Shown in pieces: positions 5,171 through 42,025 of a stretch of DNA of 64,000 bases. Made by a program: the position numbers and the translations under genes. The notes beneath the pieces were generated by a model, which saw nothing but the letters and a program-made list of their open reading frames with translations, was not told the DNA's origin and searched no databases. Numbering within the stretch: position 1 is the stretch's first letter; every line of letters begins with the position of its first letter. Where the stretch lies: positions 162,699 through 226,698 of IMG/VR virus record IMGVR_UViG_3300025098_000012; one strand, written 5' to 3'.

Positions 5171-5196
5171 CCCTAGATACAAAAAAACCCCATCTC
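5171..5196. repeat. 26-bp direct repeat (half terminator) identical to 6501-6526
   Basis: CCCTAGATACAAAAAAACCCCATCTC at both sites, flanking the LAGLIDADG gene and a membrane gene. Confidence 0.9.
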
Positions 5197-6106
5197 ACTC
5201 CACACCAAACTTAACCATCCAACGACCAATCGTACTCGCACCCACATCAAGATACTTGGCAATCCTACGCTGACTCCAACCCTTACTCCTTAAGTCCTCT
5301 AAGATGCCTTTGTCCATCTTCTTCTTGATAGCATTGTTGCGACCTTGAAAACCAAAGTCCAACTTGTAAGACATACAATCGGGTACATGAGGCTTAATGA
5401 TCTCAATGAAACGATCAGCGTTATCACCCTTAAAGTGAAACTCTCCTGCCTCCCCTTTTTTATGTGTCCAGTTAGGAGCTAAACCAAACTTCTCAAAGAT
5501 TAAGTAAGCGTTAGCTCGACTCCCCTGTTTTGCTCCAAAACAAATCTGAGGCCAATGTCCTGCATTACCATCATCGAGATACCACATAGCCAAAGCTAAC
5601 TCATCTACTTGGTCTATAACATCAGACTTAACAACTTTCCAACCCTTATCCCTATCCTCATAGAACAAGTCTCGATACTCATTAAGCATTGGGTGAGCGT
5701 GGGTGCGAAAGATATATGAGGTAAAATCTCGGCTCTTCGCTGTGGTTAACTCACCACTTGACCATTTGCCCCACTTCTCTTGCTTCCACTCAAGATACTC
5801 TTTCTGATTCGGTGCGTGTCGTTCCTCATAGTGTGAAGCGTTCGTTCTAAAGGCAATACGACCGTCACCTAGCATAGAACCAATAAGGATTGATCTTAAC
5901 TCCCCCTCAATCTTTGGTAGCTCAAGACGATCATATTTAGCCACTGTCTCAATCTCATAGCGTAGTCTCCAACTACGGACACGCTTTATGCTTGAGTCAA
6001 CACCCTCAGAAATCAACAAATCGTTAATCTGCTCCTGTGTTAAGTATTGCTTAGTATAGAGGTCTTCAAAACGCTCTTTAGATATAGGGCATGGTATCGC
6101 TCTCAT
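5195..6106 (-). mobile_element. Free-standing LAGLIDADG homing endonuclease with C-terminal HTH
   Basis: Two motifs, ILIGSMLGDG and LAMWYLDDG; terminal WSQRRIAKYLDVGASTIGRW; ATG at 6106 overlaps the upstream stop (ATGA). Confidence 0.85.
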
Positions 6107-6420
6107 AACCAACCACCCCCTAGATCCTCTTTTCCTGTCAGCAACCAATATACTGTCGCAATCATAAAAAGAGTCATACAGATAAGAAAGTACACAAATC
6201 CTACGATAACAAGTACCCCAATAGAGTTCAAGTTGAGATCAGAAAAGACAAAACCCCAAAAACCTTCCCAACTGAAGTAGCCAAGTAGCCCCCCTATGAC
6301 GAATCCTGTTAAACAAGTCATAAAGACAGACAAGTACAGGCTACACAAAGTAAGGAGGAACTTCCCTACCTTATGTACTAGGAAGCATACCCTGTTGAAG
6401 ATGCGTTCAAAAGCGTTCAT
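6103..6420 (-). CDS. Small membrane protein
   Basis: Two to three hydrophobic segments; GAGG RBS; coupled to the endonuclease gene. Confidence 0.65.
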   Translation of the reverse strand: MNAFERIFNRVCFLVHKVGKFLLTLCSLYLSVFMTCLTGFVIGGLLGYFSWEGFWGFVFSDLNLNSIGVLVIVGFVYFLICMTLFMIATVYWLLTGKEDLGGGWL

Positions 6421-6605: not shown

Positions 6606-7484
6606 TTAACGCTGTACAGTAAGACGAGCAAGACCACGAGGGTTGTAAGCTCCGATACCCAAGTTTTCAAAGACACTGAAGCCGATTGTACGAGCTTTAG
6701 GATCGTCAGCAGAAAGGACGGTCAACTCGGTACGAACAGGGATACGACCAAACATCTCTGGCTCACAGCAGACATAAACAGTTCCAACAGGAACAAGTCG
6801 GCTAGTGATGATCTGAGCACCCCAAAGGGTAGCCTGTAGACCAGTCTTGAGAAGTGCCGCTTGGCTCTCGATGTCGAGAATGTCACGACCGAACTTACGG
6901 ATGTCAGCGTAATCACGAGCATTCATGAATACACGAGCAACACGAAGGTCATGACGCTCAATGAGGCTGTATGCGTCAGCAAGAACAGCACCATTAAGAG
7001 GAGCGATAACAGGAATGTCAGCGTTAGTCTGACCTGCAACGCTATCAAATCCGTTAGCCGCAACTGCATCAAGGATAGCGAATACACGCTCGTCCTCAGC
7101 CGCTTGGATTTGAGCACGAGCAAGATCCTGAGCACGCTCGATAAGGTCGAACCTACGCTCTTTGATCTGTGTGAGTGGGATCTCTGGGTTAGAAGCGATC
7201 TCAAACAATGGGAAGATAACCCTGCGTGGCTTGGTGATAGCAAGGATGTTCTCACCCTCTTCACCAACTACGAAAGCAGTCACATCGGGATCTTTGTCGT
7301 AGATAGGTAAAGCACCATCTGGAAGTTGCTCGACTAAGAAAGTCTTACGACCAACAGAGGTGTAATCTCTACGAAGGCGAAGTGGTTGAGTCATTGAAGC
7401 GGCGAGCTTCGCACGACCCTGTGGAGTCTTAATGTAGTCAGAAATGATCTTCTGTTTTACGGCATTATCAACTGTATTACTCAT
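6606..7484 (-). CDS. Major capsid protein (HK97 fold)
   Basis: 292 aa; HK97-like pattern (VVGEEGE, FEIASNPEI, MNARDYADI, LWGAQIITS, ENLGIGAYNP); lies after protease, scaffold and decoration genes. Confidence 0.85.
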   Translation of the reverse strand: MSNTVDNAVKQKIISDYIKTPQGRAKLAASMTQPLRLRRDYTSVGRKTFLVEQLPDGALPIYDKDPDVTAFVVGEEGENILAITKPRRVIFPLFEIASNPEIPLTQIKERRFDLIERAQDLARAQIQAAEDERVFAILDAVAANGFDSVAGQTNADIPVIAPLNGAVLADAYSLIERHDLRVARVFMNARDYADIRKFGRDILDIESQAALLKTGLQATLWGAQIITSRLVPVGTVYVCCEPEMFGRIPVRTELTVLSADDPKARTIGFSVFENLGIGAYNPRGLARLTVQR

Positions 7485-7506: not shown

Positions 7507-8100
7507 TCAAATGCGTTGGTCGTATACCAACTCATCAGAAGTTGAGTCGGGAGCGATTTTAAGAATACCGATAGTAGTAGTATCAGTATGAGCGTTTGCG
7601 TTTCCTGTCTCAGTAGTCAAGAAACCATTACGAGAAGCAACAAGTGAAGCACCTGGAACATATGCTTGAGTCAAAGCTCCACCACCGTTGTCAATACGGA
7701 TTGTCTCATAAAGAAGGTTTGCGTAAGTACCTTGTGCAGAAACATAAGGTCCTCGGTTTGACGCAACACCTGGTTGGTTTTCAAAAGCATTGCCCGAAGC
7801 ATTGTTGATGAAAACACCAAGTACACGCTCAGTTGCAGGTGCAACAGCCTGTGAAGGCCCACCATGCTCATTAGCAGTACCACGAGTAAAAGCGATAGAA
7901 CCACTAAGTACACCGAGTACATTTGTTAAAAGTCCAGGAGCGGTGGTAGTATCACCGTTACCTGCAAAATCTACGGGGTTAGACTGAGTGAAAGCACTGC
8001 TGTGTAGTTGACCTACAGTGTTACGCACACCAACATGGAGGATACGCAACGCAGAGCTTGACTCTGTAAAACCACCACTAGCTTGTCCAAGTAGAGCCAT
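7507..8100 (-). CDS. Probable head decoration/cement protein
   Basis: Gly/Ala/Thr-rich 197 aa directly upstream of the capsid gene, with a late motif at 8214. Confidence 0.55.
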   Translation of the reverse strand: MALLGQASGGFTESSSALRILHVGVRNTVGQLHSSAFTQSNPVDFAGNGDTTTAPGLLTNVLGVLSGSIAFTRGTANEHGGPSQAVAPATERVLGVFINNASGNAFENQPGVASNRGPYVSAQGTYANLLYETIRIDNGGGALTQAYVPGASLVASRNGFLTTETGNANAHTDTTTIGILKIAPDSTSDELVYDQRI

Positions 8101-8245: not shown

Positions 8246-9814
8246 TTATCCGAAGAACTTGCTTACATCGGGAGCAGACTCCCAAAGTTTAGAAAGCTCA
8301 TCAGAAGCACTTGAAGCCTCACGAGAGATGTTACCGAGAGTCTTAACAGCCGCTTTACGAGCAGAGGTGCGTGGGCGATAAGAAGCCTTCTTATCAGCCT
8401 TTTCCTCTTTAGCCTCTTCCTCAGTAGCTTCTTCTTCGGTAGCTTCTTCTTCGGTAGCTTCTTCCTCAGTAGCTTCTTCCTCAGTAGCTTCTTCGGTAGA
8501 CTCTTCCTCAGCGTCTTCATCAGCCGCTGTGAAGATTGAAGCGAGGCGAGGGTCCATAGCCATTGCATCTTCTGCGTCCATGTCAAGACCCATGACATCT
8601 TCACCCATGCTCATTGTAGTTTCGACTTCTTCAGCAGTATATCCATACTCTGGATCATTCTGCTCACGAGTGTCATCTGCTTCAAGCTCTGCAAGGAGAG
8701 TTGCCATCTCATTATCAGCAGTAGTGTCCATGTCAGACATATAAGTTGAAAGAGCTTCTGCAAGACGCTCAATCTTTGCTAAACGCTGAGTAGGCTGACC
8801 CTCTGAAGGCTCACTAGCAGGAGCAGTCTCAAGTGCTACAGTGTCGTTCTGACCTTGATAGCCTGTACCAACTTGTACTGCGTTATCAGCGAGTTTACGA
8901 ACCTTGCGAGCAAGACGAGCATTAGCGGCTTTAAGAGTAGCGATTTCTTCTGCGAGAGCTTCGGCTGATGAAGAGTGATCCTCAGCCATCATCATAGCCT
9001 CGTGATCTTCAGCCATCAACATTGCTTCGTGATCTTCAGCTTCAAGATCAGCCATGATTTGTGAAAGCTCATCTTCTGCTTCAAGTTCGTCTGCGAAAGA
9101 CTCACCAAGACCAAGAGCGATTTCATCACGAGAAAGGAAGCCATCCTCATTCATATCAAGATCGTCAAAGATCTCGTCAGAGCCACCCCATTCGTCCATA
9201 GAAATCATGCCATCGCCATCGGTGTCATAAGCGTCAAACATAGAGTGACCCATGTGATCGTCAGCTTCTAGTTCATCACTTGCATTTCCTGGTCCTGTGA
9301 ATTCAAGACCTTCATCATACTCAGTTCCAACTTGTACAGCATTGTCAGCAAGACGAGCAACACGAGCATTAACAGTACGACTAGGAAGATCCATCATGCG
9401 AAGTGCAAGATCCTCGATCTCACGCTGTGAAGCAGTACGACCAAGACGACTTTCAGCGATGCGAATGCACTTAGCCGCTTTACGCTCCATAGCTTTTTTA
9501 AGGTTCTCTTGGCGAAGGTCATCAGTAAGAGCATAATCTTCAACAAGCTCATCGCTTACAGCAGGATGCTCTGGCTCCCAACCATAAGATGCAGGAGCAG
9601 GACCAGAACGGTAAGGTCCTTTACGGACTCCTTCACCGAACTCTGAGTCGAAGCCATACTGATCTACAGAAGGCTGATCGGATGAAGCAGGGTGACCGAA
9701 GTGATCCCAACCAAGATTATCGTATCCTGGGAGGCCAGAGTTTGCTCTGCGATTTCTTCTACGAGCAAGCTCTGCCCTGCGAGACATATTCTTAGAACGA
9801 GAATACCTAGACAT
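8246..9814 (-). CDS. Probable capsid scaffolding protein with an EF-hand pair
   Basis: Very acidic, coiled-coil-like, between protease and capsid genes; DTDGDGMISMDE and DMNEDGFLSRDE loops. Confidence 0.65.
   Translation of the reverse strand: MSRYSRSKNMSRRAELARRRNRRANSGLPGYDNLGWDHFGHPASSDQPSVDQYGFDSEFGEGVRKGPYRSGPAPASYGWEPEHPAVSDELVEDYALTDDLRQENLKKAMERKAAKCIRIAESRLGRTASQREIEDLALRMMDLPSRTVNARVARLADNAVQVGTEYDEGLEFTGPGNASDELEADDHMGHSMFDAYDTDGDGMISMDEWGGSDEIFDDLDMNEDGFLSRDEIALGLGESFADELEAEDELSQIMADLEAEDHEAMLMAEDHEAMMMAEDHSSSAEALAEEIATLKAANARLARKVRKLADNAVQVGTGYQGQNDTVALETAPASEPSEGQPTQRLAKIERLAEALSTYMSDMDTTADNEMATLLAELEADDTREQNDPEYGYTAEEVETTMSMGEDVMGLDMDAEDAMAMDPRLASIFTAADEDAEEESTEEATEEEATEEEATEEEATEEEATEEEAKEEKADKKASYRPRTSARKAAVKTLGNISREASSASDELSKLWESAPDVSKFFG
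8410..8510 (-). repeat. In-frame 15-bp tandem repeat encoding (EEEAT)n
   Basis: Repeated tcagtagcttcttc/tcggtagcttcttc units. Confidence 0.9.
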
Positions 9815-9852: not shown

Positions 9853-11292
9853 TTATTTCTGCCCGTAAGTGTTAAGGGATAAGAGTTTAGCTAATCTTAC
9901 AAGACGAAGAGTGTCTTGCTTCGACAGATTTTTACCATTTAAGTAGCTTGCTTGCTCCAGATAATCAACTACATCATTATACTGACTGGTTGAGCCGAGC
10001 AAACTAGCTAACTTATAAACATGGGTAGGAATCTGAACATTACAGTGATTATTCACTAGAGTTATGTTCAGTACAGCTTCTTCAACAGACTTAGCTGTTC
10101 TAACAGAAGCATCTAAGAGGCTCATGTACTTGGAAGCAGACATACCCTCTTTGACAATCGTATCGTTTTGTTCAACGACAGACTTATCAATAGGTGGGTT
10201 CATTACTTCTTGAGCCTTCTCTGCTTTGAGTTCGTTTTCTAGCTTTTGGCGAAAACGATCTACAATAGCAGTCTCGTAAACATTTTCGAGCTGTTTCAAC
10301 AAAGACTCGGAAGGTGCGTCAGCTTTATCATCACCACCTTCATCCTCATCCATGTCAAAAGGTCCAGCTTTCTTGTTTAGCTGACCATGAGGGTCATACC
10401 AAGGAGAACTCTGTAAACTAGACGCTTTAGCAATCCACTTCTGTGGAACTTCATTAAGTTGATCATCAGAAGCTGATTTAGCCATGTCAGCTTTAGGGAT
10501 GTCTAATACATTGCGAGCGACAGCTCCTACAAATGCAGGGGTTGCAACCCAAGATGCTTCGATGAATGTAACACCTGCTGTACCACCGATTTCTTCATGA
10601 CCACAAAGCTCTGCTACTCTATGTTGATTTCCTTGTTCATCATAGAAAACATTGCCTTTCTCATATTTGATATGAGAACACATCTCGGTTTCATCAGCGG
10701 CCACATGACCACATTTGGTGCAAATGGTAAAGTCTACGCTACATCCCATAGACATTGAGTTCATTTGACCCGACTCAATCTGTTTAACCAAGTCTTTGTG
10801 TTTGCGATCAGTAGCGACAAGGATGTCTACATATAAAGAATCACCGATGTCTCTAAGAACAGCATCAATGATCCGACCCTTAGATAGTTCTTCAACTTGG
10901 ATATGCTCAACAAAGTTATGAGCACCAATGAAGGTCTGATAAGATTTCTTAATCACACCTCTTGACCATGAGTCGAGGTTGTTATTGATGAACTTATCAG
11001 TGCCAGAGCTGACACGATAGTCAGCGTATTTACGATTAATAGTTTGTCCACCCTCAGTGATCGAGCCTGTCTTTGTGTTTGGAGGTGTGATTGCATCGAC
11101 AGAGCAAACGATAGTGGAGTGGGTAAGTAGAAATCTATCGGGAGTGAAAGGTTCGCCTAAGATGTCCTCTGCTTGCTTTTTGAGCGAAGCATTGATGGTT
11201 TTAGCACCAGAAGCGATCCTTACCTTATCCCATTGTAGACCATGAATGGAGGGCTGAACTACATTAGCCCTAGCATATCTTAAAAATGCCAT
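9853..11292 (-). CDS. Prohead (capsid maturation) serine protease with Cys/His insertion
   Basis: TFIGAHNFVEH, KGRIIDA, SMSMGC followed by CTKC-x-CSH, FIEASWVATPAF; head-operon position. Confidence 0.7.
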   Translation of the reverse strand: MAFLRYARANVVQPSIHGLQWDKVRIASGAKTINASLKKQAEDILGEPFTPDRFLLTHSTIVCSVDAITPPNTKTGSITEGGQTINRKYADYRVSSGTDKFINNNLDSWSRGVIKKSYQTFIGAHNFVEHIQVEELSKGRIIDAVLRDIGDSLYVDILVATDRKHKDLVKQIESGQMNSMSMGCSVDFTICTKCGHVAADETEMCSHIKYEKGNVFYDEQGNQHRVAELCGHEEIGGTAGVTFIEASWVATPAFVGAVARNVLDIPKADMAKSASDDQLNEVPQKWIAKASSLQSSPWYDPHGQLNKKAGPFDMDEDEGGDDKADAPSESLLKQLENVYETAIVDRFRQKLENELKAEKAQEVMNPPIDKSVVEQNDTIVKEGMSASKYMSLLDASVRTAKSVEEAVLNITLVNNHCNVQIPTHVYKLASLLGSTSQYNDVVDYLEQASYLNGKNLSKQDTLRLVRLAKLLSLNTYGQK

Positions 11293-11295
11293 GCT

Positions 11296-14200
11296 TTACC
11301 CCTTAACGATGTCGGAAGGTTTGATGATAAAGAGGCAGGTATAACAAGCGAGCAGTTTCTCACTCTTACCTCCTCTTCTTTTGTAAACAGTATTGCCGAG
11401 TGGAGTTTTACACTTGGGACAACAAGGTTTTTCCTCATTCCGACATTGGCGATAAGTACGATCTTTCTTATACCAATAAATAGCTTGCTTCATGTATCTG
11501 GAGGCAACACGATTAGCTTGCTTTTTGACGGCACGAGAAGTTACAGGAACAGTACCAGCTCCACCTGGTATAGTATCTTGATCGTCAGTATAAATGTTCA
11601 AGTAATCACCCGAAGTATCTACAACAAGATCTTCTACAGGATAGCGTTGCGATCCATGAGGGAACTGCACATCGACCATACCAATTGCAGGGAAGATAGC
11701 TATAACGAGTCCAGACCTTGACGGATTACCACCAAGAAAGGGGTATACACGCATCCCTAGCTCGAACGCTTGGGATCTACGCTGATAGTCAACATATTGT
11801 GTAGATCGTTTTTGCATGATTACAGTGCCTCCACTCTTATAGTAGGTGTCAATAAATGATCTATTAAAATTATTTGCTTGTTTATTTGATGAGGTAGACT
11901 CAATTTCTTGTGTCGCTGTGTCATCAAATAGCTCAGTAAGCCTACTTCTTATGTCTTTGAGCCTCTGTCTCTTAGTCGCACCATCTAAACTTTTCACTTT
12001 TTCTAGTTCTTGCTGTATCTGCTCCCATCTAAACTTTTTCGTGTTATCACTGTAGAGCTGAATACCGTCAATGCTACTCCGAGTTTCTTCAATTCTCCAT
12101 CTTGTCCTAAATTCTTCTCCAGCGGCTTCTCTCTCTTCTTCGGTGTATTCTTTACCAGTTGATAGATCAACACCATCAACGAACACCTCGAAAAACTTAT
12201 CTTTGTTTTCTCTCCAAAAGAGCTTCATTTGCTCTTTGACTTTCTTAGAAGGACCAGAGCTATCACCTTTAGGTTTGTAGTAGCCATCCCCCTTAGACTC
12301 TTTTTCGACAGTATGGAGATTAACGAAACCTCCACTCATGTAATCCCTTAACAGTTTCTTCATGTCATCAGACAATGGGTTAGGACAGGGATCATCTGAG
12401 GGGAGGAGCTTCTTGTCTCCCACACCTGCGGCGTTATTTGTAGGCCCACCAGGACAGTAGTCGTCATCTAATAAATCCAACATATCTCCATAAGGTCCTT
12501 GCTCACCTCCAACTACAGCTTTAAAATCTTCTGTGTCGAGGTTTTCAGTGACCGACTCAATCAAATCTCGTGTCTTACTAGGGTTAGTGCCTTGTTGGGA
12601 GAGCATACTGATGCCTTCTTCCCAAGCCTCTGATCCTGTTTGTCTTGCGAGTTCAAGTAATCGGTCGGGTACTTCGGCATACCCATCAATGACACCCTCA
12701 CTATTTATCATGCGTATTGTATTGAGGGCTGTTTCAGATGCTTTTAAGTTTACGAGCTTACCCTGTAATGATTTCTTTTCTTCATCAGACAGACCTTCCC
12801 CATCATTTTCTAGGAGTGCTTTTGCTTCACCAATCTCCTCTGCGACCCTTCCAACCATAGCATTACGCTGTTCTTCATTCATCTTCTTAAAGCGTCTGCC
12901 TTGAACTCTGCGTACATTCTGTAGGTGCTTCTCTTTATCGTGATCATCCCCATCAGTAGGGAACTCAAGTAGCCCGAACTCTGGATCTTCCACAATACTC
13001 TTTTGTGCATGGGTTGTTGCTAAGTAGCTACCTAGATTTTGTGCGTACTCCTTTTGAACAGCCTCATAGTTTTCTAAGTCTGATTTTAAGGAACTGAGAG
13101 AATCTTCTGCATCTTTCAAAGAATTCTTAAGTTGCTTTAGAGTTTCCTCATCTGTGTCATCGTCAGCTTCCGATAACTTTTGTTGAGCTTTATTCACCTT
13201 GTCGGTGGTTTCCTTAATGTCCTTATTGAGTTGTTCTACTGTAGGAGGAGGTGTGGGGGGCTTTAAATCCTTTGCCTCTTCGTCAATGTAAGACTGTAGA
13301 CCATCGAGTCCTTGATTTCTCATCACTTCTTCGACTTTGAATGCACCGGATCCGTAAGCCTGCACCATTTGTTGAACTTGATCTTCGGTCAACTCATCAA
13401 GTGCATCTACAGTTTCACTTATCCTTTGAATAAATGTGCGAGTGCTCTTTCTAGTTGATGCAAGATCCTTCTTCTCAAGTCCTTTGATTTGTTCCTTGAG
13501 ATCACGCTTCTCTTTATCGCTTAAAGAAGGATCTTCGAGCTTTTTTTCGAGATTCTCTATCTTCTCACTCGTGCCTTTGCTTAACTTATCCCTAAAGGCT
13601 TTCTCAAGGCGATCCTTGATTTCTGCCTTTTGGACATAGCTCGGCTGTTCCAATAAAGGAGCACCTTCAACAAACGGAGGTTCTTCTTTCGGAGGTGTAT
13701 CATCCCCCTTTGCGTCATCCTTTCCCGATTCATTTCTAGGTTTTGGCTCACCCTTACCTTTGCTTTTACCCTTGCCTTTGGGTTCTTCTTCTCCTGTTTG
13801 CTTCTCACGCTCTTTAGCTCTCTCGTCCAAGACATCTTTGGTTTCTTTTACTTCTTCTTCAGTAATGTCGGATGCCTCTTGAACATCAACCTCGACAGCA
13901 TCAATCCCCTCTTCTTCAAGAGATGTGGTGAGCTTTTCAGCGACTCTCTTTTTATAAGGACCTCGCTTTTTGCCTTTATCGGATCTTGTTTTTCTTTTCT
14001 TCTTAGGTGGTGGTTCACCTACTTCTTCCCGAACCTCCTCATGGATGTCCATAAGAAGAGCCATAATGTCTCTCATGGTGCGTTCTTCAACAAGAGACAT
14101 ATCTCTCATATCACGACCATTGTTCATCCTTGAGAGCAGGTCATATTGTTCATCATTGAGAGTAGCGGCTACGGAATAGCTGACATCACTAGAGTCTCCC

Positions 14201-14541
14201 TTAGACCCTCTAGCTTTATCCATAGCTTTGTTAAAGTCTTGGACAGCTTTTGGGTGGGCACGATTATAAGCTGTATTAAACGACAACTCATCACCTGTCA
14301 GCCTACTCTTATACTTACGACTTTTGAGCTTGTCTTTGACCTTCTTAACGATCTTCTGCTCTTTTTTCTGTTTCCTTTTCTGCTCTGGCGTGAGCTTTTG
14401 CTTCTTTCGCTTTTTCTTTTTAGTTGGCTTACGAGATCCGTCCTCACGCTTTTGAGAAGCCGCAACTCGGTGTGCCTCTAAAAGAAGGCGATCTGTTTTC
14501 TCTAGCTCCGTTTGGAGTTCTAGTAGAAGGCGACTAATCAT
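11296..14541 (-). CDS. Large charged virion-associated protein; C-terminal 173 aa probably also a separate gene (11296-11817)
   Basis: 1081-aa ORF; internal late motif at 11852, GGAGG at 11828-11832, ATG at 11817; C-terminal SH3-like segment, RVASRY tag and CxxC zinc ribbon. Confidence 0.7.
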   Translation of the reverse strand: MISRLLLELQTELEKTDRLLLEAHRVAASQKREDGSRKPTKKKKRKKQKLTPEQKRKQKKEQKIVKKVKDKLKSRKYKSRLTGDELSFNTAYNRAHPKAVQDFNKAMDKARGSKGDSSDVSYSVAATLNDEQYDLLSRMNNGRDMRDMSLVEERTMRDIMALLMDIHEEVREEVGEPPPKKKRKTRSDKGKKRGPYKKRVAEKLTTSLEEEGIDAVEVDVQEASDITEEEVKETKDVLDERAKEREKQTGEEEPKGKGKSKGKGEPKPRNESGKDDAKGDDTPPKEEPPFVEGAPLLEQPSYVQKAEIKDRLEKAFRDKLSKGTSEKIENLEKKLEDPSLSDKEKRDLKEQIKGLEKKDLASTRKSTRTFIQRISETVDALDELTEDQVQQMVQAYGSGAFKVEEVMRNQGLDGLQSYIDEEAKDLKPPTPPPTVEQLNKDIKETTDKVNKAQQKLSEADDDTDEETLKQLKNSLKDAEDSLSSLKSDLENYEAVQKEYAQNLGSYLATTHAQKSIVEDPEFGLLEFPTDGDDHDKEKHLQNVRRVQGRRFKKMNEEQRNAMVGRVAEEIGEAKALLENDGEGLSDEEKKSLQGKLVNLKASETALNTIRMINSEGVIDGYAEVPDRLLELARQTGSEAWEEGISMLSQQGTNPSKTRDLIESVTENLDTEDFKAVVGGEQGPYGDMLDLLDDDYCPGGPTNNAAGVGDKKLLPSDDPCPNPLSDDMKKLLRDYMSGGFVNLHTVEKESKGDGYYKPKGDSSGPSKKVKEQMKLFWRENKDKFFEVFVDGVDLSTGKEYTEEEREAAGEEFRTRWRIEETRSSIDGIQLYSDNTKKFRWEQIQQELEKVKSLDGATKRQRLKDIRSRLTELFDDTATQEIESTSSNKQANNFNRSFIDTYYKSGGTVIMQKRSTQYVDYQRRSQAFELGMRVYPFLGGNPSRSGLVIAIFPAIGMVDVQFPHGSQRYPVEDLVVDTSGDYLNIYTDDQDTIPGGAGTVPVTSRAVKKQANRVASRYMKQAIYWYKKDRTYRQCRNEEKPCCPKCKTPLGNTVYKRRGGKSEKLLACYTCLFIIKPSDIVKG

Positions 14542-39753: not shown

Positions 39754-39898
39754 GTTAAACTCCTTTTAGAGATTGGTTAAACGCATATAAACTAGAGTCA
39801 TATAAACAATCTACAAATCCTGTAACCCCTTATCTATGAGATTGTGTGGGAGAGGTATGTAAGCCTTGCCCAAGCCTTACTCCAACAAGGAGATCCAA

Positions 39899-42025
39899 AT
39901 GAGAGTTTTCAAGAACAAGTTCGCCAAAAAGTGTAATGTCTGTAAGACCCCTGTAGCTGAGGGTGCAGGGTTCACATATCAGCCACAGGGTGGAGCGTAC
40001 ACCACCATCTGCAATAGCTCTGTATGTCTTGACGCAAGTCCTGCACAGGTCAAGGCTCTCCTTAACGCACCCTCTGTGCGTGAGATCAATGCACAAGGTG
40101 AGATCAAGATGCCTTATGAGGCAGACGCTTTACCTATCTTGCGTGGGATGCCTGGAGCAAGGTGGAATGGCGATCTCAAGTGTTGGACTGTAAGTCTTGC
40201 ACCGAAGGATCGTCAGCGTGTGATGGAGGGTGTGCGTAGGCTCAACCTCAGCTTCCCTATCGGCTTCGATGGAGTACAGCAAGATAGCTCTGTCTTAGAT
40301 GCTATCAGTCGAGCCAAAGACGGTGGTGCTTACACCTATCAACTTGATGGGGTCAAGTTCCTGTCAAGCCATGAGAACTGCTTGCTTGCAGATGACATGG
40401 GTCTTGGGAAGACCCTACAGGCACTCATGGCTATCGAGATGGGTGGTCGAGCTATCGTACTTTGCCCTGCAACTTTGAAGCTCAATTGGGCAAACGAGGT
40501 TCGCAAGTGGAGGTCTGACCTCTCTCCAGTGGTCTGTAAAGGTCGCAAGGGGTTCAAGCTCCCTCAAGCGAATGAGGTTGTCATCCTCAACTATGAGATC
40601 CTCCCTACAGAGATGACTCCTACTGACAAGTGGGGTGATGACTCTGAGAATGTACCTCAAGCATGGCGAGATGTGCTTGCTCAAACAACCCTTATCGCTG
40701 ACGAGGCTCACCTCTGTAAGAGCCACAAGGCGATCCGTAGCAAGCGTACTAAGGTTCTCTCCAACCTCTGTAAGAGGAGTTGGGCGATGACTGGAACTCC
40801 CCTCTTGAGCAAAGGTTTTGACCTATGGGGTGTAGTCAGCACCTTCGGAATGGGTCGCACCATCTTCGGTGGCTTCAAGGGGTTCATCCGAGACATGAAC
40901 GCTCATCAAAACTACTATGGTGGATGGGAGTTCGGCACACCTAACCCATGTGTACCAGAGAAGCTCCGTAGGGTCATGCTCCGTAGGACTAAGACTGAGG
41001 TCTTGACCAACCTCCCACCTAAGACCTACCAAGATGTACTTGTCGAGGTAGGCTCAAAGCGACTCCTCAAGATGAGTGAGAAGATGCTTGAGGCAATGAA
41101 GGAGAATGGCTCAAACGCTATCCCCGACTTTAGCGAGTTCAGTCGCATCCGAGCCGAGCTTGCCGAGTCTCGTATCTCTGCCCTTGAAGAGATGGTTGAG
41201 AGCTTCGAGGAGGCTAACGAGCCTGTGGTCGTGTTCTCTGCACACCGATCACCAATCGAGGCTATGGCAAAGCGTGATGGTTGGGCTGTAATCATGGGGG
41301 ATACCGACCAAGATGATCGTGAAGATGCTGTTATGGCTTTCCAAGCTGGAATGCTCAAAGGGATCGCCTGTACCATCAAAGCTGGTGGTGTCGGGATCAC
41401 CCTCACCAAAGCAAGCAAGATGATCTTCTGTGATCAAGAGTGGAATCCTGCTCTTAATCTCCAAGCTGAGGATCGTATCTGTCGTATCGGTCAGACTGCT
41501 TCTAACTTGCAGTACATCCGACTCGTATCGGACTGTGCGATGGATCTTCATGTCCTCAAACTCATAGACAAGAAAAAGGCTCTTATCGAGGCATCAATCG
41601 AGAAAGAGTGTGGAGCGTTGACCTCAACTGCTACCACTAAGGGTGTCGCTATCAAGCAAGAGACTCGTGAGGAGCGTGATGCTCGTATCGCTAAAGCTGT
41701 TCAGCGAGACGCTCAAAACGCTGTCTCTAACCAACTTACAGAGTGGACTAAGGCAATCCCATCAAAGATCCTCAATCGTTCTGTAGACGCTAACCTACAA
41801 GCTCAAATCATCACAGCAAGTGAGTCTCTTGACGGTGCTTGTGATGGGGCAACCGATAAGGACGGAATGGGGTTCAACAAACCCGACAGCTATGTGATGA
41901 AGAACATCAACTCAAGTGGTCTACTCCATGACCTCGATCAGCAAGACTTGCTCAAGTTCGCTTGGTCAAAACTCCTCAAGTATCGGGGTCAAGTAGGAAC
42001 TATCGCACCTAGCCTTTACCTATAA
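39899..42025 (+). CDS. SNF2/SMARCAL1-like SF2 helicase
   Basis: LADDMGLGKT, DEAH, TGTP, LRRTK, NLQAEDRICRIGQ; AAGGAG RBS before ATG 39899. Confidence 0.88.
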   Translation: MRVFKNKFAKKCNVCKTPVAEGAGFTYQPQGGAYTTICNSSVCLDASPAQVKALLNAPSVREINAQGEIKMPYEADALPILRGMPGARWNGDLKCWTVSLAPKDRQRVMEGVRRLNLSFPIGFDGVQQDSSVLDAISRAKDGGAYTYQLDGVKFLSSHENCLLADDMGLGKTLQALMAIEMGGRAIVLCPATLKLNWANEVRKWRSDLSPVVCKGRKGFKLPQANEVVILNYEILPTEMTPTDKWGDDSENVPQAWRDVLAQTTLIADEAHLCKSHKAIRSKRTKVLSNLCKRSWAMTGTPLLSKGFDLWGVVSTFGMGRTIFGGFKGFIRDMNAHQNYYGGWEFGTPNPCVPEKLRRVMLRRTKTEVLTNLPPKTYQDVLVEVGSKRLLKMSEKMLEAMKENGSNAIPDFSEFSRIRAELAESRISALEEMVESFEEANEPVVVFSAHRSPIEAMAKRDGWAVIMGDTDQDDREDAVMAFQAGMLKGIACTIKAGGVGITLTKASKMIFCDQEWNPALNLQAEDRICRIGQTASNLQYIRLVSDCAMDLHVLKLIDKKKALIEASIEKECGALTSTATTKGVAIKQETREERDARIAKAVQRDAQNAVSNQLTEWTKAIPSKILNRSVDANLQAQIITASESLDGACDGATDKDGMGFNKPDSYVMKNINSSGLLHDLDQQDLLKFAWSKLLKYRGQVGTIAPSLYL

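What the first reader, a model, noticed from the sequence alone, without database searches (positions are those of the whole stretch)
8246..9814. Scaffold with a canonical EF-hand pair and duplicated LADNAVQVGT motif
Seen: DTDGDGMISMDE and DMNEDGFLSRDE match the 12-residue EF loop, spaced as a pair; RLADNAVQVGT and KLADNAVQVGT recur; (EEEAT)n tract. Established: EF-hands bind Ca2+. Inference: calcium-sensitive head assembly, and the duplicated motif marks protease sites. I know of no scaffold described with EF-hands.
Basis: partly seen in the sequence, partly recalled or inferred. Interest (0 to 1): 0.6.

Follow-up and report, generated by a model that had tools for sequence, protein, structure and literature searches.

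The report
EF-hand pair in megaphage scaffold protein
A marine huge phage encodes, exactly where head-scaffolding genes sit, a very acidic and mostly disordered protein carrying a real, conserved but dispensable calcium-binding (EF-hand) module, a combination I found described nowhere.

Summary
The ORF at 8246-9814 (-) encodes a 522-aa protein with net charge -76. It has two canonical 12-residue EF loops at residues 197-208 and 220-231. Both match PROSITE PS00018, and three Pfam EF-hand models score above their curated cut-offs. Two LADNAVQVGT copies and an (EEEAT)n tract are also present.

AlphaFold2 folds residues 191-236 (pLDDT about 90) as a paired EF-hand lobe that superposes on polcalcin, troponin C and calmodulin lobes. 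The lobe is compact, with only 11 residues between the loops.

The scaffold role is inferred, not shown. The gene lies between a T4-gp21/herpes-assemblin-fold prohead protease and a decoration-like gene plus an HK97-fold major capsid protein related to Bacillus phage G. This order held in all 56 related loci long enough to judge.

The family (more than 150 metagenomic members) has a near-invariant C-terminal peptide. Only about 40% of members carry the EF pair. It occurs on both sides of the deepest split and needs at least 7 gains or losses. A relative with a 99%-identical capsid protein has Met/Asp-rich repeats in its place. Where present, it is under purifying selection.

I therefore read it as an accessory divalent-cation-binding node in the scaffold's acidic spacer. 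Calcium-controlled assembly and "motif = protease site" remain untested.

The parts
8246..9814 (-). CDS of the 522-aa acidic protein P0001 (putative scaffolding / prohead-core protein), stop codon included
   Evidence: Net charge -76, 24% Asp+Glu. More than 150 metagenomic homologs.
9554..9814 (-). Residues 1-87: basic then disordered N-terminus with a duplicated GW(D/E)xxxHPA motif (residues 35-43 and 78-85)
   Evidence: pLDDT 42-69. H41 P42 A43 and H83 P84 A85 are near-invariant in 101 homologs.
9320..9553 (-). Residues 88-165: conserved helical N-domain (three helices)
   Evidence: pLDDT 79-96. E110 K112 A113 K115 C116 I117 A120 L124 G125 are near-invariant. Only generic helical-hairpin fold matches were found.
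9323..9352 (-). LADNAVQVGT copy 1 (residues 155-164), at the C-terminal end of helix 145-165 before disordered linker 163-190
   Evidence: A looser version (A-[DG]-[DN]-x-[VM]-[QL]-x-[GA]-T-G-Y-x-G ... GPGN) persists in homologs that lack EF-hands.
9095..9247 (-). Residues 190-240: compact EF-hand pair module
   Evidence: Pfam above cut-off. pLDDT about 90 with a beta-bridge 203-205/226-228. VIA Z 7.2, rmsd 2.1 A over 51 residues to polcalcin. Invariant D197 G211 F216 D220 in 44 homologs. dN/dS 0.19.
9191..9226 (-). EF loop 1, residues 197-208 (DTDGDGMISMDE)
   Evidence: Matches PS00018.
9122..9157 (-). EF loop 2, residues 220-231 (DMNEDGFLSRDE)
   Evidence: Matches PS00018.
8975..9040 (-). 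27-nt x 2.4 tandem repeat encoding the His/Met/Asp/Glu-rich AEDHEAM(L/M)M units, part of the hypervariable acidic spacer
   Evidence: This is the least conserved region of the protein (0.32 mean column identity).
8864..8974 (-). Residues 281-317: conserved long helix (likely coiled coil) ending in LADNAVQVGT copy 2 (residues 308-317, window 8864-8893)
   Evidence: Helix 281-317, pLDDT 77-90, followed by disordered 319-342. A284 L287 A288 E289 are conserved.
8519..8617 (-). Residues 400-432: conserved block (MGEDVMGLD ... DPRLASIF)
   Evidence: D406 A425 F428 are invariant and M408 G409 L410 D421 L424 A430 near-invariant in 101 homologs.
8402..8494 (-). (EEEAT)n tract, 15-nt unit x 6.2
8249..8392 (-). 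Residues 475-522: basic stretch plus the near-invariant C-terminal peptide (..ELSKLWESAPDVSKFFG); proposed capsid-protein-binding end
   Evidence: Present in nearly all 120 listed homologs. G494 L507 L510 W511 P515 F521 are invariant. Predicted helix 500-513. Binding was not shown (one search gave no verdict).
9853..11292 (-). Upstream neighbour: prohead maturation protease (479 aa) with an invariant Cys/His cluster and a long C-terminal helical extension
   Evidence: phrog_18299, E 1.8e-15. 33% identity to phage G gp19, E 2e-21. Fold matches: VZV protease Z 10.0, T4 gp21 Z 9.6; Foldseek top hits T4 gp21 and herpes proteases.
7507..8100 (-). Downstream neighbour: 197-aa Gly/Ala/Ser/Thr-rich protein in the slot of the phage G decoration protein gp26
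   Evidence: Position only. No BLASTP similarity to gp26.
6606..7484 (-). Major capsid protein (292 aa, HK97 fold family, no delta domain)
   Evidence: phrog_2522, E 2e-51. 89% identity to LR745208.1, 46% to Tunturi_5, 38% to phage G gp27.

Best explanation
P0001 is most likely the scaffolding (prohead-core) protein of a marine huge myophage of the phage-G lineage. It is the functional counterpart of T4 gp22.

Proposed working (all of this paragraph is inferred). The conserved C-terminal peptide, preceded by a basic stretch, tethers the protein to the inside of the HK97-fold capsid shell. The conserved helical N-domain and the long helices drive self-association. The long polyanionic, largely disordered middle fills and sizes the very large prohead. 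The neighbouring gp21/assemblin-fold protease then degrades the protein before DNA packaging.

A compact EF-hand pair (residues 190-240) is embedded in that acidic spacer. It has every canonical Ca2+ ligand. I expect it to bind Ca2+ (or Mg2+) and to fold into a small rigid three-helix lobe. This lobe would act as an accessory metal-dependent structural or association node that tunes compaction or self-association of the scaffold core.

The module is not essential for building the shell, because closely related phages replace it with Met/Asp-rich acidic repeats.

Shown by tools: the EF-hand sequence, predicted fold and conservation; the gene order; the protease fold; the patchy distribution of the module.
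Inferred: the scaffold role, capsid binding by the C-terminus, actual metal binding, and any regulatory effect of Ca2+.
For: EF-hand is real:
- Three Pfam models score above cut-off, and PS00018 matches both loops.
- Chance probability is about 5e-5.
- AF2 gives pLDDT about 90 with the inter-loop beta-bridge.
- All top Foldseek and VIA matches are EF-hand lobes.
- Ca-ligand positions D197, D199, D201, E208, D220 and E231 are invariant or near-invariant in 44 homologs down to 31% identity.
- dN/dS is 0.19, like the other conserved domains.

Scaffold role:
- The gene follows a protease with the T4 gp21/assemblin fold.
- It lies 640-906 nt upstream of the capsid gene in 56/56 related loci. The protease is upstream in the 47 loci where my motif scan found one; at least some of the other nine loci end just upstream of the scaffold gene.
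- The same slot in LR745208.1 holds a clear homolog. In Tunturi_5 it holds an acidic 528-aa protein.
- The capsid protein has no delta domain, so a separate scaffold is expected.
- The protein has long helices plus disorder and a near-invariant C-terminal peptide.

Accessory nature of the module:
- 43 of 101 members carry it, at least 7 state changes are needed, and it occurs on both sides of the deepest split.
- L020 has a 99%-identical capsid protein, but Met/Asp repeats replace the module.
Against: - No experiment or proteome links any family member to proheads.
- There is no sequence homology to any known scaffold or PHROG family, nor to phage G gp21 or Tunturi_5 gp332.
- The test of the C-terminus against the capsid protein gave no verdict.
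- The EF-hand_7 pair model is below its cut-off.
- EF1 lacks a normal exiting helix in the model, so affinity and cooperativity may differ from classical pairs.
- Free Ca2+ in bacterial cytoplasm is sub-micromolar (general knowledge), so the sites could be empty or Mg2+-loaded during assembly.
- Frequent loss of the module argues against a central role.
Confidence: 0.6

Rival explanations
1. Calcium switch. Ca2+ binding to the EF pair controls prohead assembly, scaffold release or proteolysis, and the LADNAVQVGT copies are the protease cleavage sites that free the EF-containing fragment.
For: - The two motif copies bracket the EF module and its acidic helix (residues 155-164 and 308-317).
- Both sit at helix C-termini followed by disordered linkers.
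- Both are kept at the protein level despite 6/10 synonymous codon differences.
- A looser form of the motif is family-wide.
- The phage is marine, where external Ca2+ is about 10 mM (for the habitat; the concentration is general knowledge).
Against: - The EF module is absent from 58/101 members and from a relative with a 99%-identical capsid protein.
- The exact duplicated motif is limited to the closest clade.
- The motif occurs in no other protein of the 226-kb record, although a protease site would be expected in other substrates.
- The residue after GT varies (E/D/G), so there is no conserved P1 acid as in T4- or phiKZ-type sites. [LI]xE sites are not enriched: 7 observed against 7.2 expected.
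Confidence: 0.15
2. Internal head (or ejected) protein rather than scaffold. The protein or its fragments stay in the capsid with the DNA, as T4 internal peptides or phiKZ inner-body proteins do. The EF pair would bind Ca2+ once the virion is in seawater, or act after ejection into the host.
For: - Huge phages package many processed internal proteins, and T4 keeps acidic gp22-derived peptides in the head (general knowledge).
- The N-terminus is basic.
- The gene is in the head module.
- The same EF module sits in another protein, P0124, with basic termini in a replication-gene neighbourhood, so the module is not tied to scaffolding.
Against: - A net charge of -76 is unfavourable next to packaged DNA.
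- The slot directly between protease and capsid genes is the classical scaffold position.
- No proteomic data exist either way.
Confidence: 0.15
3. Structural EF-hand only. The pair is a small folding or dimerisation unit that binds Mg2+ or nothing under physiological conditions, and calcium has no role.
For: - Several homologs have weakened loops: Gly6 replaced by Glu/Asp, Glu12 replaced by Asp. 19 of 44 match PS00018 at only one loop.
- The linker is unusually short and EF1 lacks its exiting helix.
- The module is interchangeable with low-complexity acidic repeats.
Against: In the window's protein both loops carry all canonical ligands, including the bidentate Glu12. The ligand positions are the best-conserved columns of the module.
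Confidence: 0.1

Closest known systems
T4 gp22 prohead core (scaffolding) protein, with the gp21 protease
   Same: Gene order is protease, then acidic helical protein, then capsid protein. The neighbouring protease has the gp21/assemblin fold. The composition is highly acidic.
   Different: No sequence similarity to any PHROG family. The protein is twice as long and mostly disordered. A decoration-like gene sits between it and the capsid gene. It carries an EF-hand pair, which to my knowledge gp22 lacks.
P22 gp8 / phi29 gp7 type scaffolds (C-terminal coat-binding helix)
   Same: A conserved C-terminal helix preceded by basic residues is the best-conserved part of the family. This resembles the coat-binding helix-turn-helix of P22 gp8 (PMC12005531 for the P22 scaffold in procapsids).
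   Different: No homology. Binding to the capsid protein is not shown (one search gave no verdict). P22 scaffold is recycled, whereas here a protease is encoded next door.
Canonical EF-hand lobes (calmodulin, troponin C, polcalcin)
   Same: Both loops are canonical. The model has paired loops with a short beta-bridge. rmsd is about 2.1-2.4 A over 50 residues with Z 6.5-7.2; Foldseek probability is 0.97-0.99.
   Different: Only 11 residues lie between the loops. About 50 model residues span about 64 residues of the solved lobes. The EF1 exiting helix is replaced by a conserved E-W-G-G-S turn, giving three helices rather than four.
Lanmodulin and other compact bacterial EF-hand pairs, including the C-terminal EF module of the 392-aa transaldolase family NF008965
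   Same: EF loops are closely spaced. Lanmodulin 6mi5 aligns across both loops at E 0.006. NF008965 positions 333-387 match residues 186-240 at E 1e-11. That lanmodulin has 12-13 residues between its loops is from my own knowledge.
   Different: There is no Pro at loop position 2 (the lanmodulin hallmark, from my own knowledge). There are two hands rather than four. The module is embedded in a 522-aa phage structural-module protein.
Phage G gp20/gp21 and Tunturi_5 gp332 (positional counterparts in cultured relatives)
   Same: All follow the homologous protease and precede the decoration and capsid genes. All are acidic with coiled-coil or low-complexity regions.
   Different: hhalign finds no homology, and I saw no EF loops in them. 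Their function is also unproven. PMC12484599 names only the protease gp19, portal gp14, decoration protein and capsid protein gp27.

Membership tests
EF-hand (Pfam PF13202/PF00036/PF13405; PROSITE PS00018) | 12-residue loop with oxygen ligands at positions 1, 3, 5, 9 and 12, Gly at 6, a hydrophobic residue at 8 and Glu at 12 | tested here: met
   Both loops match PS00018. Pfam scores are 37.1, 31.8 and 31.2 bits against cut-offs of 25.9, 25.4 and 25.
EF-hand (Pfam PF13202/PF00036/PF13405; PROSITE PS00018) | Helix-loop-helix hands that pair through a short antiparallel beta-bridge | tested here: met
   The AF2 model has strands 203-205/226-228 and helices 192-196, 213-219 and 229-271 at pLDDT about 90. 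It superposes on solved EF lobes. Caveat: the EF1 exiting helix is reduced to a turn, and the Pfam pair model EF-hand_7 scores 23 bits against a cut-off of 30.
EF-hand (Pfam PF13202/PF00036/PF13405; PROSITE PS00018) | Binds Ca2+ | not testable with these tools
   Needs ITC, Tb3+ luminescence or 45Ca overlay on the expressed module.
Phage scaffolding / prohead-core protein (a functional class, not one homologous family) | Encoded in the head module between the maturation protease and the major capsid protein | tested here: met
   Window gene order. Held in 56/56 related loci. Protease fold confirmed.
Phage scaffolding / prohead-core protein (a functional class, not one homologous family) | Elongated, helical or coiled-coil, self-associating protein | tested here: inconclusive
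   Long helices at 229-271, 281-317 and 343-380 plus disorder. Self-association was not tested.
Phage scaffolding / prohead-core protein (a functional class, not one homologous family) | Binds the capsid protein | tested here: inconclusive
   Complex prediction of the capsid protein with residues 470-522 returned no verdict.
Phage scaffolding / prohead-core protein (a functional class, not one homologous family) | Present in proheads, then removed or degraded before or during DNA packaging | not testable with these tools
   No cultured member and no proteome of this clade.
Phage scaffolding / prohead-core protein (a functional class, not one homologous family) | Sequence homology to a described scaffold family | tested here: not met
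   No PHROG family at E <= 0.01. No homology to phage G gp21 or Tunturi_5 gp332. No meaningful BFVD match.
Lanmodulin | Four closely spaced EF hands with Pro at loop position 2 | tested here: not met
   Only two hands are present, and position 2 is Thr/Met. The shared feature is short spacing only.

The most novel reading that the evidence does not exclude
The EF-hand pair makes prohead maturation of some marine megaphages calcium-gated. Ca2+ entering the cell from seawater late in infection would load the scaffold's EF lobe. This would trigger scaffold release or cleavage at the flanking conserved motifs. Alternatively, EF-bearing fragments stay in the head as Ca2+-loaded counter-ions. Either way it would be the first metal-sensing scaffolding protein.
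Probability: 0.12. Interest if true: 0.75.

Novelty: new variant of a known kind. Interest (0 to 1): 0.5.

Why it matters
Scaffolding proteins of huge phages, which must build T>=40 shells, are almost unknown, and none has been reported with a metal-binding domain.

This family offers three things:
- A recognisable, abundant marine family with a near-invariant C-terminal tag that could serve as a marker for scaffold genes of phage-G-like megaphages.
- A natural presence/absence series. The EF pair alternates with Met/Asp repeats on nearly identical capsid proteins, which makes the contribution of a metal-binding node to giant-capsid assembly directly testable.
- A minimal three-helix EF-hand pair, which may interest protein engineers.

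If Ca2+ really regulates assembly, it would link phage morphogenesis to ion homeostasis of the infected marine cell.

Tried and rejected
- Complex prediction (capsid protein + residues 470-522) scored 0.01 and gave no verdict. It is not evidence either way.
- hhalign of the family profile against phage G gp21 and Tunturi_5 gp332 found no homology.
- BLASTP of the 197-aa neighbour against phage G decoration protein gp26 found no similarity.
- tblastn of the EF module against 50,697 phage records gave no match at E <= 0.05. The low-complexity filter may hide Asp-rich loops.
- A word search restricted to the EF module found only this family plus P0124.
- Foldseek against BFVD returned nothing meaningful except an EF-hand protein of a giant virus.
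- The protease had no sequence hit in the PDB. Its fold had to be predicted.
- A scan of the 226-kb record for the C-terminal peptide, the LADNAVQVGT motif and looser versions in other ORFs found none.
- T4-type [LI]xE and phiKZ-type [SAG]xE sites are not enriched.
- Literature searches for an EF-hand scaffold or EF-hands in jumbo phages found only EF-hand-like sites in endolysins.
- Phage G and Tunturi papers contain no data on the positional counterparts.
- Dockerin and thrombospondin-type repeats were considered and rejected: there is no Pfam hit, and the loops have the EF-hand hydrophobic position 8 and Glu12.
- Read laying, alternative genetic codes and the large representative-protein search were not needed and not used.
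Full report
**What is there.**
The window is the last 64 kb of a 226,698-bp IMG/VR virus record that CheckV estimates to be 73% complete. The DNA occurs in marine, seawater and sponge metagenomes.

The ORF at 8246-9814 (minus strand) encodes a 522-aa protein, P0001. It follows an AAGGA-type ribosome-binding site. The protein is 24% Asp+Glu with net charge -76.

- Two 12-residue EF loops at residues 197-208 and 220-231.
- Two copies of LADNAVQVGT at residues 155-164 and 308-317.
- An (EEEAT)n tract encoded by a 15-nt unit x 6.2 at 8402-8494.

**Are the EF-hands real?**
Yes, by four lines of evidence.
- Sequence: both loops satisfy the full PROSITE PS00018 pattern. Pfam EF-hand_5, EF-hand_1 and EF-hand_6 score 37.1, 31.8 and 31.2 bits, above their curated cut-offs, each with two stretches. 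Only the 67-position pair model EF-hand_7 stays below its cut-off.
- Chance: the loop pattern occurs nowhere else in the six-frame translation of the window. Two or more loops arise in only 5e-5 of composition-preserving shuffles of this acidic protein.
- Fold: an AlphaFold2 model built on 101 homologs gives residues 191-236 a pLDDT of about 90, with the classical short beta-bridge between the loops at 203-205/226-228. All top Foldseek matches are EF-hand lobes: calmodulin N-lobe, troponin C, obelin, with probabilities 0.97-0.99 and rmsd 1.4-3 A over about 60 columns. Their E-values are weak because the domain is a tenth of the query. An independent aligner gives Z 7.2, rmsd 2.1 A over 51 residues to polcalcin, with similar values for some twenty other EF proteins.
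- Conservation: see the family section below.

The module is unusually compact. Only 11 residues separate the loops, and about 50 model residues cover about 64 residues of solved lobes. The exiting helix of hand 1 is replaced by a conserved E-W-G-G-S turn.

Its nearest curated sequence relatives are compact bacterial EF pairs. One is the C-terminal module of the 392-aa transaldolase family NF008965 (E 1e-11). Another is lanmodulin. The module lacks lanmodulin's position-2 proline.

**The family and conservation of the module.**
A word-index search found 154 homologs, all metagenomic and many on contigs of 200-376 kb. A C-terminal peptide (..ELSKLWESAPDVSKFFG) is nearly invariant throughout. 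The helical N-domain (residues 88-165) and a block at residues 400-432 are also conserved.

The EF pair always has exactly 23 residues between loop starts. It is present in 43 of 101 aligned members, including members only 31-40% identical overall.

Within the 44 EF-bearing sequences:
- D197, G211, F216 and D220 are invariant.
- D199, D201, I204, E208, W209, G210, G225, L227 and E231 are nearly invariant.
- dN/dS across 14 distinct EF-bearing loci is 0.19, against 0.13 and 0.26 for the N-domain and the C-terminus. dS is near saturation, so these values are rough.

On a tree built from 360 columns that exclude the module, the EF pair lies on both sides of the deepest split. It needs at least 7 changes of state, at least 5 of them forced by well-supported branches. 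This fits an old module lost repeatedly, or exchanged by recombination.

The clearest example is locus L020. Its capsid protein is 99% identical to the window's, but Met/Asp-rich repeats stand where the EF module would be.

The module also occurs, at 68% identity, in an unrelated protein. P0124 has basic termini and acidic repeats, and is encoded among replication genes of another large contig. The module is therefore portable.

**Is the protein a scaffold?**
This is inferred, not shown. The supporting evidence is as follows.
- The upstream gene (9853-11292) matches phrog_18299, a head maturation protease. It is 33% identical to phage G gp19. Its model matches varicella-zoster protease (Z 10.0) and T4 gp21 (Z 9.6), well above the next hits. 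Foldseek ranks T4 gp21 and herpesvirus proteases first.
- Downstream lie a 197-aa Gly/Ala/Ser/Thr-rich gene in the slot of the phage G decoration protein, and then the 292-aa major capsid protein. The capsid protein matches phrog_2522 at 2e-51 and is 89% identical to LR745208.1, 46% to Tunturi_5 and 38% to phage G gp27.
- In all 56 IMG/VR loci with enough upstream DNA, the homolog lies 640-906 nt upstream of the capsid gene. My motif scan found the protease upstream in 47 of these. At least some of the other nine loci end just upstream of the scaffold gene.
- The capsid protein has no delta domain, so a separate scaffold is expected.
- Protease, then acidic helical protein, then capsid protein is the T4 gp21-gp22-gp23 arrangement (established knowledge).
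- The model shows long helices separated by disorder and a C-terminal helix after a basic stretch. This resembles the coat-binding ends of known scaffolds.

The evidence against is as follows.
- No PHROG family matches.
- There is no profile similarity to the positional counterparts in phage G or Tunturi_5.
- The papers on those phages give no data on them.
- The complex test with the capsid protein gave no verdict.

**The duplicated motif.**
The two LADNAVQVGT copies differ at six of ten codons, all synonymously. Selection therefore acts on the peptide.

Both copies end a helix and precede a disordered linker. The exact duplication is confined to the closest clade. A looser motif (A-[DG]-[DN]-x-[VM]-[QL]-x-[GA]-T-G-Y-x-G ... 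GPGN) follows the N-domain in most of the family, and is sometimes doubled. It is thus a real short linear motif.

Nothing identifies it as a protease site:
- It occurs in no other ORF of the 226 kb.
- The residue after G-T varies.
- T4- or phiKZ-type sites are not enriched.

A binding or oligomerisation role is equally possible.

**Most likely mechanism.**
I consider P0001 the scaffold/core protein of this phage-G-lineage megaphage (about 0.7). Its EF pair is a real metal-binding lobe (about 0.8-0.9 that it binds Ca2+ in vitro). The lobe would act as an accessory structured node within a hypervariable polyanionic spacer.

Because the module is often absent or replaced by acidic repeats on nearly identical capsids, calcium is unlikely to be a general trigger of assembly in this lineage. 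A clade-specific modulatory role remains possible (about 0.12-0.15).

**Comparison with what is known, and novelty.**
Full-text searches found EF-hand-like sites in phage endolysins only. None was in scaffolds or in jumbo-phage papers. No GenBank phage record matched the module.

This is a new variant of a known kind: a scaffold-position protein with an embedded compact EF-hand pair. It is of moderate interest, limited by the lack of any functional data and by the module's dispensability.

**Housekeeping.**

Noticed in passing
window 5195-6148 (-): A LAGLIDADG homing endonuclease with a C-terminal HTH lies directly downstream of the capsid gene (Pfam LAGLIDADG_2, E 3e-21). The related phage LR745208.1 instead has a GIY-YIG-like gene upstream of its protease (L003:3317-4177).
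   Followed up: partly
window 11296-14541 (-): A 1081-aa Lys/Glu-rich low-complexity protein whose last ~190 residues carry a CxxC...CxxC zinc-ribbon. In LR745208.1 that C-terminal part is a separate 193-aa ORF (L003:2758-3339). It has no portal or other family match.
   Followed up: partly
window 9853-11292 (-): The prohead protease has an invariant Cys/His cluster (C184, C191, C194, C205, H207) inserted in the gp21/assemblin fold and shared with phage G gp19. It also has a ~200-residue helical C-terminal extension. One homolog (P0214) carries an intein.
   Followed up: partly
window 9560-9712 (-), residues 35-43 and 78-85 of P0001: A second duplicated motif, GW(D/E)xxxHPA, lies in the disordered N-terminus. 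The His-Pro-Ala of both copies is near-invariant in 101 homologs. Its function is unknown.
   Followed up: no
L086:8001-9236: P0124 (411 aa) carries the same compact EF module (68% identical) between acidic DGFDRFASDYD-type repeats and basic termini. It is encoded among WGR, PolA, Hc1 and topoisomerase I genes of a 76-kb metagenomic contig. The module is therefore mobile between proteins.
   Followed up: partly
window 9095-9256 (-), residues 186-240 of P0001: The nearest curated relative of the module is the C-terminal EF pair of the 392-aa transaldolase family NF008965 (E 1e-11). This hints at a bacterial origin for the module. The donor lineage was not determined.
   Followed up: partly
window 7507-8100 (-): The 197-aa Gly/Ala/Ser/Thr/Asn-rich protein between scaffold and capsid genes matches no family and has no BLASTP similarity to phage G gp26. 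It occupies the decoration-protein slot in all relatives examined.
   Followed up: partly
window 40001-42000: GC is 0.506 against about 0.43 elsewhere. The region overlaps a helicase ORF (39866-42025; phrog_62, E 1e-90), so it may have been acquired separately.
   Followed up: no
window 1-64000: The head-gene cluster is embedded among replication and nucleotide-metabolism genes (clamp loader, exonuclease, several helicases, ribonucleotide reductase) rather than in a contiguous structural module.
   Followed up: partly
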